From Macrostomum lignano (Eukaryota), in NCBI GenBank assembly GCA_002269645.1, contig NIVC01001360.1:47237-111236 (forward strand): DNA of 64,000 nt. Reading direction: 5' to 3'. The notes beneath the pieces were generated by a model. It did no database searches and was not told the origin of the DNA. It was given only the letters and a program-made list of their open reading frames with translations. Positions within the stretch are counted from its first letter, which is position 1. Each line of letters starts with the position of its first letter. Below are positions 8,648 through 11,600 of this stretch, in pieces. A program made the position numbers and the translations under genes.

Positions 8648-11600
8648 CTGAGCGGGAAACTGGCCAGCGAGGATTTGGCTAATTTGGGATCAGCTGTCTA
8701 GCTAGCTAAGGTTAGGAGCTACGGTTGCTTGAGACTGGATTAGCTGCAGTACCATCGTAACTATAGTAGTGAGATGCCGGCCACGCGTCTGAGATGGCTG
8801 GGGCAAAAGCTAAAACTGTGGGAAAAGATTAAAAAGTGCATATACGTAATTGCCGATCATTTTCAATAAGCTTCTTTTAAACATTAGCTTAAATTAATTT
8901 TTTTGCAATTATTCTTGAATCAGGGACAGACAGACAGACAGACAGACACACACACAGAAAGACAGACAGACAGACAGACAGACAGACAGACACACAGAAA
9001 GACAGACAGACAGACAGACGGACAGACAGGCAGGCAGGCAGACAGACAGACAGACAGAGAGACAGACAGACAGACAGACAAACAGACAGACAGACAGACA
9101 GACAGACAGACAGACAGACAGACAGACAGACAGACAGACAGACAGACAGACAGACAGACAGACAGACAGACAGGCACCGCCCGTACCCGCAGACAGTCAG
9201 CGTGCACATCGGGCAGGCGGGCTGCCAGCTGGGCCACGCGGTCTGGGAGCTGTACTGCCTGGAGCATGGCGTCCAAGCAGACGGCCGGGCCGGTCCGTGG
9301 AAGGCCTGCGCCAGGGAGACGGCTGAGTCGGCATTCAGCCGCAATGGCAACCGGTTCACGCCGCGGGCGGTCATGTGCGACACGGACCCGACCGTGATAG
9401 ACGAGGTTCGACACGGCGCCTACAGGCAGCTGTTCGCGCCTGACTGCCTCATCTCGCACAAGGAGGGCGCGGCGGGCAACTACGCCGTGGGCCGGAACGC
9501 GGTTGGTCGGGCCATCCTGCCACAGGTGTCGCAGGCGGTGCGGCGGCAGGCGGAGGCCTGCGACCGCCTGGAGGGCCTGATCTTGTACCATTCGTACGGC
9601 GGCGGCACGGGGTCCGGCTTCACGCCGCTGCTCATGGAGAGCCTGCGCAACAGCTACGGCAGGAAGACGCTGCTGCAGATGGCCGTGTACCCTTCACCAA
9701 AGTGAGCTGCTGGAGTTCTCCACGAAATCTTGTTGATGTCTTTGTAGGTGGCCATTCAGACTCACCGTGGAAATGCCTAGGCTGTGCTTGCTGTGTATCA
9801 TGGACGGGTAGGTAGGGCGACAGGTTCACGCTGTGGAGTAGCTAATGCCATACTGGAGTGACGCTCTATAGAGTATGCCATGCTGGAGTGACGCTCTATA
9901 GAGTATGCCATGCTGGAGTGACGCTCTATAGAGTATGCCATGCTGGAGTGACGCTCTATAGAGTATGCCATGCTGGAGTGACACTATAGAGTATGCCATG
10001 CTAGAGTGACGCTCTATAGAGTATGCCATGCTGGAGTGACGCTCTATAGAGTATGCCATGCTGGAGTGACACTATAGAGTATGCCATACTGGAGTGACGC
10101 TCTATAGAGTATGCCATGCTGGAGTGACACTATAGAGTATGCCATGTTGGAGTGACACTATAGAGTATGCCATACTGGAGTGACACTCTATAGAGTATGC
10201 CATGCTGGAGTGACACTATAGAGTATGCCATGCTGGAGTGACACTATAGAGTATGCCATGCTGGAGTGACACTATAGAGTATGCCATGCTGGAGTGACGC
10301 TCTATAGAGTATGCCATGCTGGAGTGACACTATAGAGTATGCCATGCTGGAGTGACGCTCTATAGAGTATGCCATGCTGGAGTGACACTATAGAGTATGC
10401 CATACTGGAGTGACGCTCTATAGAGTAGGCCATGCTGGAGTGACACTATAGAGTATGCCATGTTGGAGTGACACTATAGAGTATGCCATGTTGGAGTGAC
10501 ACTATAGAGTATGCCATGTTGGAGTGACACTATAGAGTATGCCATGTTGGAGTGAGACTCGTTATAAGTTTGGCTCTGTAAGTGACTACAGTTTATTCAG
10601 CGGTACCAAAAGACTTGTTAAAAGAACAGCAGATTATGAAATGAAGAGGCATTAGATGGATTCTAGTTATTACGAGCGTATCATTCAGAATATTTACAAC
10701 TGAAATCTCGGGCACCGTTTAGCTTTTAACCCTTTACTCAATGGTTACCGGATCGGACTCATCTCTGATGCCGAACCCCTGTCTGATGGCAGGCTGGCCA
10801 CAGGAACCGTCGAGCCCTACAACACCGTGGCCTGTCTGCAGGCCTGCGAGCCGCTATCCAGTGGCGTCATCCTGCTGGACAATGAGGCTATGTACGGCAT
10901 CATCCAGAAGTACTTTGGTGGCTCAATGACCTCCAGTGACTACACACGGGCCAATCGGCTCTGCGCCCAGCTCATCAGCTCGCTGACCGCCGGCTTCCGG
11001 TTCAGCGGCGAGCAGAACGCAACTCTGGCCGACATCTCCACCAATCTCATCCCCTACCCGCGCCTCATCTACCTGTCGCCCTCGTACGCGCCGATGAGGC
11101 GGTCAGGCTACGTGGAGTCCAGCGACAAGCGAGCCGCATCTCAGCAGCTGGTGAGCGGGACAGACATTGTAGACTACGCTGCGCTGGAGTGACAGGCTCT
11201 TTAGGGTTGCGCCGTGCTGGAGTGACAGGCTCTGTAGAGTTGCGCCATGCTGGAGTGACAGGCTCTGTAGAGTTACATCATGCTGGAGTGACAGGCTCTA
11301 TAGAGTTACGCCATGCTGGAGTGACAGGCTCTGTAGAGTTACGCCATGCTGGAGTGACAGGCTCTTTAGGGTTGCGCCATGCCGGAGTGACAGGCTCTGT
11401 AGAGTTACGCCATGCTGGAGTGACAGGCTCTTTAGGGTTGCGCCATGCCGGAGTGACAGGCCCTGTAGAGTTACACCATGCTAGAGTGACAGGATCTGTA
11501 GAGTTACGCCATGCTGGAGTGACAGGCTCTTTAGGGTTGCGCCATGCCGGAGTGACAGGCCCTGTAGAGTTACACCATGCTAGAGTGACAGGATCTGTAG

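What the first reader, a model, noticed from the sequence alone, without database searches (positions are those of the whole stretch)
10985..11075. Natural substitution of the alpha-tubulin GTPase-activating residues (E254 to D, D251 to T)
Seen: [25 protein letters not shown] aligns without gaps to [25 protein letters not shown], giving D251T and E254D. The KEDAANNY loop reads KEGAAGNY (N101G), while GGGTGSG is intact. Known: alpha-E254 completes the beta-tubulin GTPase site; engineered E254A blocks and E254D slows hydrolysis and stabilises microtubules. Inference: incorporation would give slow-hydrolysing, hyperstable lattices, fitting a link with acetylation.
Basis: partly seen in the sequence, partly recalled or inferred. 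Interest (0 to 1): 0.72.

Follow-up and report, generated by a model that had tools for sequence, protein, structure and literature searches.

The report
Divergent flatworm alpha-tubulin lacking catalytic residues
A flatworm (Macrostomum lignano) gene encodes a highly diverged but strongly conserved-by-selection alpha-type tubulin in which both residues that normally trigger GTP hydrolysis in microtubules are naturally replaced, and the gene sits inside the gene for the enzyme that acetylates alpha-tubulin; whether it builds microtubules at all is still unknown.

Summary
Window 10989-11063 (+) encodes [25 protein letters not shown], which aligns without gaps to the alpha-tubulin T7 loop/helix H8. 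That gives D251T (ACT) and E254D (GAC); the T3 loop reads KEGAAGNY and GGGTGSG is intact. The peptide lies in exon 3 of a four-exon gene, identical to Macrostomum lignano Mlig020544.g1 (560 aa). It is not a sequencing error or a pseudogene: three genomic copies carry the same codons, and dN/dS between copies is 0.04-0.10. This is not a normal alpha-tubulin with two substitutions. It is 37-39% identical to canonical alpha, less than alpha is to beta, and it is basic (pI 8.2). It lacks R2, has a net 8-residue deletion at H10, and has lost H406/W407, the acidic H12 surface and the acidic tail. No orthologue was found outside this species. The GTP-binding core is kept while every polymer-contact surface is remodelled. 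A hydrolysis-impaired stabiliser or cap is therefore plausible, but incorporation into microtubules is unproven. The acetylation link is physical: the gene lies antisense within the annotated span of the alphaTAT/MEC-17 gene. A lysine aligns with K40, but its flanks are not conserved.

The parts
8614..8625 (+). Exon 1 of the tubulin-like gene (MLGK; ATG at 8614), followed by a GT donor
   Evidence: The spliced product is identical to the deposited protein P0268/PAA68972.1.
9193..9701 (+). Exon 2: N-terminal GTPase domain. Contains GQAG 9211-9222, the K40-equivalent K41 at 9301-9303, T2 DTDP 9379-9390 (E71D), T3 KEGAAGNY 9460-9483 (D98G, N101G) and T4 GGGTGSG 9598-9618.
   Evidence: tblastn gives 48% identity to alpha-tubulin, E=9e-53. 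Pfam Tubulin 5e-51.
10793..11150 (+). Exon 3: T5 loop to M-loop. It includes the finding.
10989..11063 (+). T7 loop/helix H8 peptide [26 protein letters not shown]251 is ACT at 11022-11024 and D254 is GAC at 11031-11033.
   Evidence: The alignments are gapless.
12182..12985 (+). Exon 4: C-terminal half. Contains the shortened H10-S9 region (12269-12343), the alpha-type S9-S10 loop (12362-12406), de-acidified H11'-H12 (12488-12589) and a 129-residue Gly/Ser/Pro repeat tail ending YYEE (stop codon 12983-12985).
12708..12823 (+). Coding 15-bp tandem repeat (GSGLD x about 8) in the tail. Copy number differs between the three gene copies (proteins of 500, 505 and 560 aa).
8925..9173 (.). Intron 1 is almost entirely a (GACA)62 array.
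9845..10559 (.). Intron 2 holds a tandem array of a 28-bp unit, about 25 copies.
11183..12032 (.). Intron 3 holds a tandem array of a related 33-bp unit, about 26 copies.
13245..15212 (-). Exons 1-6 of the alpha-tubulin N-acetyltransferase (alphaTAT/MEC-17) gene, tail-to-tail with the tubulin-like gene. Exon coordinates are 15212-15118, 14700-14637, 14558-14466, 14381 (or 14354)-14190, 14118-13971 and 13325-13245.
   Evidence: tblastn with human ATAT1. Exon reconstruction. Pfam Acetyltransf_16 9.5e-67 over the full profile. 59-65% identical to mollusc, insect and placozoan alphaTAT.
4173..4637 (-). Distal open reading frame whose stop (4173) is the annotated end of the alphaTAT coding sequence. 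If the annotation is right, the tubulin-like gene lies inside an alphaTAT intron.
   Evidence: The annotated gene spans L003 5560-16599, which is window 4173-15212, 424 aa. The equivalent model in L001 carries PF05301. I could not resolve the intermediate exons.

Best explanation
The window encodes Mlig020544.g1 of the flatworm Macrostomum lignano. It is a lineage-restricted, neofunctionalised tubulin derived from alpha-tubulin.

Shown:
- It is alpha-class by best match, by fold and by the alpha-specific S9-S10 loop insertion.
- It is transcribed, according to an RNA-seq-based annotation.
- It is intact in three genomic copies and under strong purifying selection.
- It keeps the nucleotide-binding core: GQAG, GGGTGSG, D205/N206, Y224, N228 and N249.
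- It has replaced both residues that activate GTP hydrolysis (D251T, E254D). It has also lost R2, shortened H10 by a net 8 residues, and remodelled the M-loop, the H11-H12 region (R402G, H406A, W407T), the acidic H12 surface and the tail. The protein is basic overall.

Inferred:
- The T7/H8 substitutions are not an isolated tuning of an otherwise normal alpha-tubulin. They are part of a release from canonical lattice constraints.
- The mechanism I think most likely (about 40%) is this. The protein still binds GTP and pairs with a beta-tubulin through its nucleotide face. It presents a minus-end-facing surface that cannot properly activate hydrolysis on the beta-tubulin below. It would then act as a sub-stoichiometric stabiliser or terminator (cap) of specialised, non-dynamic microtubules, not as a bulk lattice subunit.
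- The antisense nesting in the alphaTAT gene may couple its expression to tubulin acetylation, positively or negatively. This is conjecture.
For: Identity and gene model:
- The four-exon model is identical to PAA68972.1.
- Pfam Tubulin 5e-51 and Tubulin_C 1e-10.

Alpha class:
- blastp gives 285 bits to alpha, 185 to beta and 149 to gamma.
- The best 60 PDB sequence hits shown and the best 50 Foldseek hits shown (TM about 0.85) are alpha chains.
- The S9-S10 loop has alpha length.

Functional, not decaying:
- Three intact copies give omega 0.047, 0.097 and 0.040 (20, 10 and 16 synonymous against 3, 3 and 2 non-synonymous differences).
- There is a synonymous change at A250, next to the unchanged T251 and D254 codons.
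- The GenBank models derive from a genome-guided RNA-seq assembly (PMC5730564).

Core kept, interfaces lost:
- H1 12/14, T4 8/9, H4 5/5 and H7 7/9 invariant positions are kept.
- By contrast T7 keeps 3/6, H8 2/5, the H10-S9 loop 1/5, H11-H12 3/12 and H12 5/13. H10 has a 10-residue gap.
- AlphaFold is confident for the N-domain (pLDDT 80-94) and H11-H12 (80-88), but not for residues 240-370.

Consequence of the substitutions:
- E254D slows hydrolysis and nearly abolishes catastrophes; E254A, E254Q and E254N abolish hydrolysis (PMC7018511; PMC11893814).
- D251 and the R2-betaE69 salt bridge are also implicated (PMC10319017).
Against: - There is no evidence that the protein dimerises with beta-tubulin or localises to microtubules.
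- The intradimer (nucleotide) face is also eroded: N101G, D98G, E71D, R402G, H406A and W407T. Even heterodimer formation is therefore uncertain.
- The intermediate domain, including T7, is modelled at low confidence, so no geometric statement about the catalytic site is possible.
- No orthologue exists in either large protein search. Site-specific conservation of T251/D254 over evolutionary time cannot be shown. The three copies are recent duplicates (dS 0.03-0.06).
- No tissue or cell-type expression data were found.
Confidence: 0.55

Rival explanations
1. The protein is a working alpha-tubulin isotype that is incorporated as a bulk lattice subunit. Through E254D and D251T it gives slow-hydrolysing, hyperstable microtubules that are then acetylated on K40 by the neighbouring alphaTAT.
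For: - The catalytic-residue substitutions are real and selected.
- E254D has exactly this effect in human tubulin.
- A Lys aligns with K40.
- The gene is nested in the alphaTAT gene.
- The H2-S3 loop and H1-H2 elements used in lateral contacts are fairly well kept.
Against: - It is 37-39% identical to alpha, below the alpha-beta level.
- H10 is shortened, the M-loop is 8% identical with an insertion, and H406/W407/R402 and R2 are lost.
- The H12 acidic surface and the acidic tail used by motors, MAPs and tail-modifying enzymes are gone, and pI is 8.2.
- The K40 flanks are entirely different.
- Canonical lattice subunits are among the most conserved proteins known; the worm's own alpha is 81% identical to human.
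Confidence: 0.15
2. The protein no longer takes part in alpha/beta microtubules at all. It is a GTP-binding tubulin-fold protein with a new role, such as a distinct filament or oligomer, a soluble regulator or decoy for tubulin-binding factors, or a component of a lineage-specific structure. The loss of D251/E254 simply reflects that GTPase activation of beta-tubulin is no longer required.
For: - Erosion affects every polymer interface, not only T7/H8.
- The overall charge is basic and the tail is non-acidic and repetitive, with rapidly varying copy number.
- No orthologues were found, which suggests a young, fast-evolved function.
- The AlphaFold intermediate domain is poorly supported by canonical alpha homologues.
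- Many other orphan divergent tubulin-like sequences exist in the databases.
Against: - The alpha-specific S9-S10 insertion, the TNLIPYPR motif, N249, N258 and the H7 core helix are kept. That suggests continued constraint on a tubulin-type longitudinal contact.
- E254 became Asp, the most conservative possible change, rather than a random residue. This hints at a retained though weakened carboxylate function.
Confidence: 0.3
3. It is an artefact or decay product: an assembly or sequencing error at the codons, or a pseudogene drifting neutrally.
For: Several UniProt models of this gene from the older assembly are frameshifted (P0002, P0014, P0085, P0122). The gene sits in very repeat-rich DNA.
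Against: - The reading frames are intact with GT-AG introns in three loci of the newer assembly.
- The T251 and D254 codons are identical in all three copies.
- Omega is 0.04-0.10, with p=6e-10 against neutrality.
- The annotation is transcript-based.
- The in-frame parts of the old models show the same NATLAD peptide.
Confidence: 0.02

Closest known systems
Canonical alpha-tubulin (human TUBA1B; M. lignano P0099)
   Same: It has the tubulin GTPase and C-terminal domains and the alpha-type S9-S10 insertion. GQAG, GGGTGSG, DNEA, Y224/N228, N249 and TNL(I/V)PYPR are present. A Lys aligns with K40. The best sequence and fold matches are alpha chains.
   Different: Identity is only 37-39%. The changes are D251T, E254D, D98G, N101G, E71D, loss of R2, a net 8-residue deletion at H10, R402G/H406A/W407T, a de-acidified H12, pI 8.2 against 4.9, and a 129-residue Gly/Ser/Pro repeat tail ending YYEE instead of an acidic tail ending EEY.
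Engineered GTPase-site mutants of alpha-tubulin: human E254D/A (PMC7018511), E254A/N (PMC8764682), E254Q/N (PMC11893814); yeast tub1 D252A/E255A (Anders and Botstein 2001, from memory)
   Same: The same two positions are changed, and the E254D substitution is identical to the engineered 'slow hydrolysis' mutant.
   Different: Those are single substitutions in otherwise wild-type tubulin shown to polymerise. Here the substitutions are natural and combined (T251 plus D254). They are embedded in a protein whose other interfaces have diverged, and its polymerisation is untested.
Beta-tubulin T7/H8 (Lys at the position equivalent to alpha-E254), which leaves the intradimer N-site GTP unhydrolysed
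   Same: It is a natural replacement of the catalytic carboxylate on the face that contacts the neighbour's nucleotide, giving a permanently GTP-bound interface (established knowledge; beta D/K pattern seen).
   Different: The window protein is alpha-class, not beta. It keeps a carboxylate (Asp) rather than Lys.
Other naturally divergent alpha-class paralogues with residue 254 replaced: Glandiceps talaboti XP_077977661 (E254D), Tortispora caseinolytica ODV90974 (E254D), unnamed P0158 (D251N+E254D), P0164/P0232 (E254Q)
   Same: They are lineage-specific alpha-derived tubulins, 42-60% identical to human alpha, with the catalytic Glu naturally replaced.
   Different: None is an orthologue; their identity to the window protein is no higher than that of canonical alpha. 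None has the T251+D254 pair. As far as I know none is characterised.
C. elegans MEC-12 alpha-tubulin with MEC-17/ATAT-2 (PDB 8y9f, 8yar, 8yal)
   Same: A specialised alpha-tubulin isotype is functionally tied to the K40 acetyltransferase. These structures are among the best matches.
   Different: MEC-12 is a conventional, highly conserved alpha-tubulin with a canonical K40 loop and catalytic residues (from knowledge). The link there is functional, not a nested gene arrangement. Here the link is only genomic so far.
Divergent mitotic tubulins of Naegleria (PMC9036621) and other minor tubulin classes (delta, epsilon, zeta; Paramecium theta/iota/kappa, from memory)
   Same: They are precedents for tubulins that have left the canonical alpha/beta sequence space for specialised structures.
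   Different: Those are older and conserved across species or clades. The window protein was found only in M. lignano.

Membership tests
Tubulin superfamily | Tubulin/FtsZ GTPase domain plus tubulin C-terminal domain | tested here: met
   PF00091 at 5.4e-51 (174 bits, cut-off 33). PF03953 at 1.3e-10 (41.9 bits, cut-off 26.6).
Alpha-tubulin class | Closer to alpha than to beta, gamma or other classes in sequence and fold | tested here: met
   blastp gives 285 bits to alpha, 185 to beta and 149 to gamma. The 60 PDB sequence hits shown and the 50 Foldseek hits shown are alpha chains. In an NJ tree it sits on a very long branch outside the tight canonical alpha clade.
Alpha-tubulin class | Alpha-specific 8-residue insertion in the S9-S10 loop (absent in beta) | tested here: met
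   [15 protein letters not shown] aligns without gaps to PTVVPGGDLAKVQRA. Beta has an 8-residue gap there.
Alpha-tubulin class | Nucleotide-binding signature loops (T1 GQAG, T4 GGGTGSG, N206, Y224, N228) | tested here: met
   All are present.
Alpha-tubulin class | T3 loop KEDAANNY | tested here: not met
   It reads KEGAAGNY (D98G, N101G).
Alpha-tubulin class | GTPase-activating pair D251 and E254 in T7/H8 | tested here: not met
   The residues are T251 and D254. D/E is present in 159 of 161 canonical alpha-tubulins surveyed.
Alpha-tubulin class | Extreme sequence conservation (canonical alphas are typically more than 70-80% identical across animals) | tested here: not met
   37.4% to human TUBA1B and 37.8% to M. 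lignano alpha P0099, while those two are 81% identical to each other. 105 of 177 alpha-invariant positions are kept.
Alpha-tubulin class | Acidic protein with an acidic, Glu-rich C-terminal tail ending in Tyr | tested here: not met
   pI is 8.2 (core 8.6) against 4.9. The tail is 129 residues of Gly/Ser/Pro repeats, pI 5.3, ending YYEE.
Alpha-tubulin class | Forms a heterodimer with beta-tubulin and is incorporated into microtubules | not testable with these tools
   Only single-chain prediction was available, and the intermediate domain was low-confidence.
K40-acetylatable alpha-tubulin (alphaTAT substrate) | Lys at position 40 in the luminal H1-S2 loop within a recognisable SDKTIGGG context | tested here: inconclusive
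   K41 aligns with K40 in the HMMER and tblastn alignments. However, the context is GPWKACA against PSDKTIG: none of the +/-3 neighbours is conserved and the loop is 3 residues shorter.
Processed or decaying pseudogene | Disrupted frame, or neutral substitution pattern (omega about 1) | tested here: not met
   The frame is intact with three introns in three loci, and omega is 0.04-0.10.
AlphaTAT/MEC-17 (the neighbouring antisense gene) | Full-length Acetyltransf_16 domain with conserved catalytic motifs | tested here: met
   PF05301 at 9.5e-67 over profile positions 2-173 of 173. [11 protein letters not shown] and AIDRPS are conserved. It is 59-65% identical to other animals' alphaTAT.

The most novel reading that the evidence does not exclude
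The protein is a naturally GTPase-activation-deficient alpha-class tubulin. It pairs with beta-tubulin and acts at low stoichiometry to cap or lock specialised microtubules in a GTP-like, non-dynamic state. Its expression is coupled to the K40 acetyltransferase by antisense nesting inside that gene. Together they would form a genomic 'stable-microtubule module' and a natural counterpart of the engineered E254 mutants used to mimic the GTP cap.
Probability: 0.12. Interest if true: 0.8.

Novelty: new variant of a known kind. Interest (0 to 1): 0.5.

Why it matters
Alpha-E254 and D251 are regarded as essentially invariant because they drive the GTP hydrolysis behind dynamic instability. All functional knowledge of their replacement comes from engineered, often dominant-lethal, mutants. 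Here both are replaced in a gene that selection maintains, in an animal with working transgenesis and RNAi.

If the protein enters microtubules, it would show how cells use a hydrolysis-impaired subunit physiologically, as a stabiliser or an end cap. It would also provide a natural reagent for GTP-cap biology.

If it does not enter microtubules, it documents how quickly an alpha-tubulin duplicate can leave the lattice and gain a new role while keeping its GTP-binding core.

The antisense nesting within the alphaTAT gene is, to my knowledge, an undescribed arrangement linking a tubulin gene to its modifying enzyme. The survey also shows that natural E254D or E254Q replacements recur in several unrelated divergent alpha-class paralogues, which suggests an overlooked class of tubulins.

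Tried and rejected
1. Bacterial-style ORF reading. The region is eukaryotic, with introns filled by tandem repeats, so I built a spliced model instead.
2. My first exon coordinates were off by one or more bases and gave a frameshift. This was corrected.
4. Orthologue search. Neither the 5.8-billion-cluster search nor the exhaustive 1.84-billion-representative search found anything between the M. lignano copies and canonical alpha at about 39%. P0122, P0002, P0014 and P0085 looked like diverged paralogues (66-89%). They are frameshifted models of the same gene from an older assembly. Cross-species dN/dS was therefore impossible, and I used the three intragenomic copies.
5. NJ tree of 55 tubulins. 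It is a star of long branches and not informative beyond showing the protein outside the tight canonical alpha clade. Its grouping with P0166, P0211 and P0178 is probably long-branch attraction, since identity to them is lower than to canonical alpha.
6. Expression and tissue data. The gene identifiers were not found in any paper's text or in the supplements of four M. lignano papers. A search on Macrostomum sperm microtubules gave nothing usable.
7. Literature on alphaTAT recognition of the K40 loop gave no usable specificity rule.
8. Full reconstruction of the alphaTAT 424-aa coding sequence. A simple seven-exon model fails. A brute-force search for one extra exon gives 247 solutions. A search with the distal exon retrieved only partial old models without the MEC-17 part. 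The nesting therefore rests on the annotated CDS end-points matching the alphaTAT ATG (15212) and the distal stop (4173).
9. AlphaFold geometry of the catalytic site was rejected as evidence, because residues 240-370 have pLDDT below 60.
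Full report
**What is at the coordinates**

Window 10985-11075 lies in a coding exon. Frame +3 reads ...[30 protein letters not shown].... The quoted 25-residue peptide is encoded at 10989-11063.

The surrounding DNA is eukaryotic. A tblastn with human alpha-tubulin finds three collinear blocks on the + strand:
- 9190-9720: 48% identity, E=9e-53.
- 10791-11096: 37% identity, E=6e-18.
- 12149-12586: 25% identity, E=6e-14.

The blocks are separated by sequence made almost wholly of tandem repeats.

With GT-AG junctions the gene has four exons: 8614-8625, 9193-9701, 10793-11150 and 12182-12985. 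It encodes 560 residues. This model is letter-for-letter identical to the deposited protein PAA68972.1 (BOX15_Mlig020544g1) of the free-living flatworm Macrostomum lignano. The window is identical to contig NIVC01001360.1 of assembly GCA_002269645.1.

That GenBank annotation was produced from a genome-guided RNA-seq transcriptome (PMC5730564). The gene is therefore transcript-supported.

**Checking the observation**

Three different aligners place [25 protein letters not shown] against [25 protein letters not shown] without a gap: tblastn, HMMER against PDB chains and MAFFT L-INS-i. By coincidence of compensating indels, the protein's own numbering equals alpha-tubulin numbering here.

- N249 is kept.
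- D251 is Thr (ACT, 11022-11024).
- E254 is Asp (GAC, 11031-11033).
- The T3 loop is KEGAAGNY (D98G, N101G) and GGGTGSG is intact.

The T/D pair is seen only in the M. lignano copies.

**Error or decay?**

M. lignano carries three copies of the locus: the window (L003), L001 (Mlig020438.g1) and L002 (Mlig015062.g1). This is consistent with the known duplicated blocks of the DV1 assembly. All three have intact frames and the same ACT and GAC codons. L002 has a synonymous GCA>GCC change in the adjacent A250 codon.

Nei-Gojobori counts over 469 codons:

| Pair | Synonymous / non-synonymous differences | dS | omega |
|---|---|---|---|
| window vs L001 | 20 / 3 | 0.060 | 0.047 |
| window vs L002 | 10 / 3 | 0.029 | 0.097 |
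| L001 vs L002 | 16 / 2 | 0.047 | 0.040 |

For window vs L001, the binomial test against neutrality gives p=6e-10.

Protein models from an older, independent assembly show the same NATLAD peptide wherever they are in frame.

**What kind of tubulin it is**

Pfam finds the tubulin GTPase domain (5e-51) and the tubulin C-terminal domain (1e-10). The protein is alpha-class on four counts:
- blastp gives 285 bits to human alpha, 185 to beta and 149 to gamma.
- The best 60 solved-structure sequence matches shown are alpha chains.
- The best 50 Foldseek matches of the AlphaFold model are alpha chains, with TM about 0.85.
- The alpha-specific eight-residue insertion in the S9-S10 loop is present at full length.

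It is nevertheless extraordinarily diverged. It is 37.4% identical to human TUBA1B and 37.8% to an M. lignano canonical alpha-tubulin (P0099). Those two are 81% identical to each other, and human alpha and beta are 42% identical. It is thus further from alpha-tubulin than beta-tubulin is.

No orthologue was found. In the 5.8-billion-cluster search and in the exhaustive HMMER scan of 1.84 billion representatives, everything other than M. lignano's own copies is a canonical alpha at about 39% or less. The apparent intermediates (P0002, P0014, P0085, P0122) are frameshifted models of the same gene.

**Where it has diverged**

I compared the protein with positions that are at least 95% invariant in 36 canonical alpha-tubulins. 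It keeps 105 of 177.

The nucleotide-binding core is well kept:
- H1 12/14, H2 3/3, T4 8/9, H4 5/5, H7 7/9.
- GQAG, GGGTGSG, D205/N206, Y224, N228 and N249 are all present.

The losses cluster on the polymer-contact surfaces:
- Minus-end-facing longitudinal surface: T7 3/6 (L248Q, V250A, D251T); H8 2/5 (E254D, F255I, Q256S); a 10-residue gap at H10 (net 8 residues shorter); H10-S9 loop 1/5. The N-terminus reads MLGKT instead of MREC. This removes R2, whose salt bridge to beta-E69 has been proposed to position E254 (PMC10319017).
- Nucleotide (plus-end-facing) surface: T2 E71D; T3 D98G and N101G; H11-H12 3/12, including R402G, H406A and W407T.
- Lateral contacts: the M-loop is 8% identical and three residues longer.
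- Outer surface: H12 5/13, with E414N, E415R, E417Q, E420S, D424H and D431A.

The C-terminal tail is 129 residues of GSGLD and GPGSKSP-type repeats ending YYEE. Its repeat number differs between the three copies, giving proteins of 500, 505 and 560 aa. The protein is basic, pI 8.2 against 4.9 for TUBA1B.

The AlphaFold model has mean pLDDT 63.5 and pTM 0.71. It is confident for the N-domain (80-94) and H11-H12 (80-88). It is not confident for residues 240-370 (30-60), which include T7, the M-loop and the H10 region. I therefore draw no geometric conclusions about the catalytic site.

**What the substitutions should do, if the protein sits in a lattice**

- E254A abolishes GTP hydrolysis in human tubulin.
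- E254D slows hydrolysis, lengthens EB comets, speeds growth and almost eliminates catastrophes (PMC7018511).
- E254Q and E254N are also hydrolysis-deficient (PMC11893814).
- QM/MM simulation identifies E254 as the catalytic residue that deprotonates the lytic water, and cites mutagenesis implicating D251 as well (PMC10319017).

A subunit with T251 plus D254, and lacking R2, would be at least as impaired as E254D. This step follows from established knowledge. The step that is not established is incorporation.

**Most likely mechanism and alternatives**

The pattern is a core under constraint, with all canonical interfaces remodelled and then held by strong purifying selection. This points to neofunctionalisation, not to fine-tuning of a lattice subunit.

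- My preferred reading (about 40% for the specific mechanism; 0.55 for the broader statement). The protein still binds GTP and pairs with a beta-tubulin. It presents a hydrolysis-incompetent, altered minus-end face, and acts sub-stoichiometrically as a stabiliser or cap of specialised stable microtubules. Two things favour a retained tubulin-type contact: TNLIPYPR, N249, N258 and the S9-S10 insertion are kept, and Glu was replaced by the most conservative alternative, Asp.
- Main rival (about 30%). The protein has left the alpha/beta lattice altogether, and the catalytic residues are simply no longer needed.
It is disfavoured by the extent of interface, surface-charge and tail change.
- Artefact or pseudogene: about 2%.

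**The acetylation link**

On the minus strand, immediately 3' of the tubulin stop codon (12983-12985), lie six exons (15212-13245). They encode a complete MEC-17/alphaTAT catalytic domain:
- Pfam Acetyltransf_16 at 9.5e-67 over the full profile.
- 59-65% identical to mollusc, insect and placozoan alphaTAT.
- [11 protein letters not shown] and AIDRPS motifs conserved.

The deposited gene models span window 4173-15212 (424 aa) and the equivalent region in L001 (415 aa, carrying PF05301). They start at the alphaTAT ATG that I identified independently and end at the stop of a distal ORF. As annotated, then, the whole tubulin-like gene lies antisense inside an alphaTAT intron. I could not resolve the intermediate exons.

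The same order is present in all three loci: sugar transporter, distal alphaTAT exons, tubulin-like gene, alphaTAT catalytic exons. Because these are recent duplicates, this is not independent evidence of conservation.

A Lys (K41, 9301-9303) aligns with K40. Its context is GPWKACA against PSDKTIG, with no neighbour conserved and a loop three residues shorter. This is weak evidence for substrate status. Antisense nesting could mean co-regulation or mutual interference; neither was tested.

**Comparison with what is known, and novelty**

The protein is already in GenBank and UniProt, as a 'hypothetical protein' and 'Tubulin alpha chain'. I found no study of it. It fails several defining features of canonical alpha-tubulin (catalytic pair, T3 signature, conservation level, acidic tail) while meeting the class-level ones. 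I file it as a new variant of a known kind: an alpha-derived divergent tubulin.

The survey also turned up other lineage-specific alpha-class paralogues, 42-60% identical to human alpha, with residue 254 naturally replaced:
- a Glandiceps (hemichordate) paralogue and a Tortispora yeast protein: E254D;
- an unnamed sequence: D251N plus E254D;
- two sequences: E254Q.

The phenomenon therefore recurs, although the T251/D254 pair is unique here.

**Verdict**

The finding is of moderate interest because the organism is experimentally tractable, and the decisive tests (multimer prediction, localisation, recombinant dynamics) are straightforward.

Noticed in passing
window 4173-15212 (-), overlapping the tubulin-like gene at 8614-12985 (+): The alpha-tubulin K40 acetyltransferase (alphaTAT/MEC-17) gene is annotated as spanning the tubulin-like gene on the opposite strand. 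Its six catalytic-domain exons (15212-13245) are tail-to-tail with the tubulin gene, and its annotated last exon ends at 4173. I know of no other tubulin gene nested antisense in an intron of its modifying enzyme's gene. The intermediate exons were not resolved.
   Followed up: partly
window 8925-9173, 9845-10559, 11183-12032: All three introns of the tubulin-like gene consist almost entirely of tandem arrays: (GACA)62, a 28-bp unit x25 and a 33-bp unit x26. The units of introns 2 and 3 are related and share CATGCTGGAGTGAC. Neighbouring introns and intergenic DNA (4025-8329, 13439-13901) are likewise filled with 11-43-bp arrays.
   Followed up: partly
window 12708-12982; L001 and L002 equivalents: The C-terminal tail is a coding repeat (GSGLD x about 8, then GPGSKSP-like units) whose copy number differs between the three gene copies (proteins of 500, 505 and 560 aa). 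All three copies end in YYEE. The structured core differs by only 2-3 residues between copies.
   Followed up: partly
whole protein (window 8614-12985): The protein is basic (pI 8.2; core 8.6), whereas canonical tubulins are strongly acidic (TUBA1B 4.9). Most acidic residues of the H12 motor/MAP-binding surface are replaced.
   Followed up: partly
proteins P0151, P0158, P0164, P0194, P0197, P0232 (not in the window): Other lineage-specific divergent alpha-class tubulins naturally carry E254D (Glandiceps talaboti, Tortispora caseinolytica, unnamed sequences), D251N+E254D, or E254Q. Replacement of the catalytic Glu seems to recur in orphan alpha paralogues.
   Followed up: partly
proteins P0002, P0014, P0085, P0122 (UniProt entries from the older M. 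lignano assembly): Several public protein models of this gene are frameshifted chimeras. In-frame stretches are identical to the gene and are interspersed with out-of-frame translation. They can masquerade as 66-89% identical paralogues in similarity searches.
   Followed up: yes
window 44628-46482 (-) and 48976-50961 (-): Two tandem copies of a MatE (MATE efflux family) gene. Each consists of two large ORF blocks with Pfam MatE hits (3e-28, 3e-31, 5e-26) and near-identical N-terminal halves.
   Followed up: no
window 57261-59388 (-); 26546-27550 (-); 40-2293 (+); 21630-23738 (+): Other genes in the window are an ENPP-like type I phosphodiesterase (Pfam Phosphodiest 1.8e-75), a Put_Phosphatase-family protein (2.4e-19), the 3' end of an MFS sugar transporter whose intron is a long tandem array, and a long Arg/Ser- and Pro-rich ORF. 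None has an obvious connection to the finding.
   Followed up: no
P0053 (Schistocephalus solidus model, not in the window): A cestode 'tubulin alpha chain' model of 638 aa is a canonical alpha-tubulin fused to the N-terminal half of a second, divergent tubulin whose T3 loop reads GREGSGGNYA. Another trematode protein (Calicophoron daubneyi P0145, 964 aa) is a divergent alpha-like tubulin with a long tail that keeps D251/E254. Flatworms may harbour several divergent alpha-derived tubulins.
   Followed up: no
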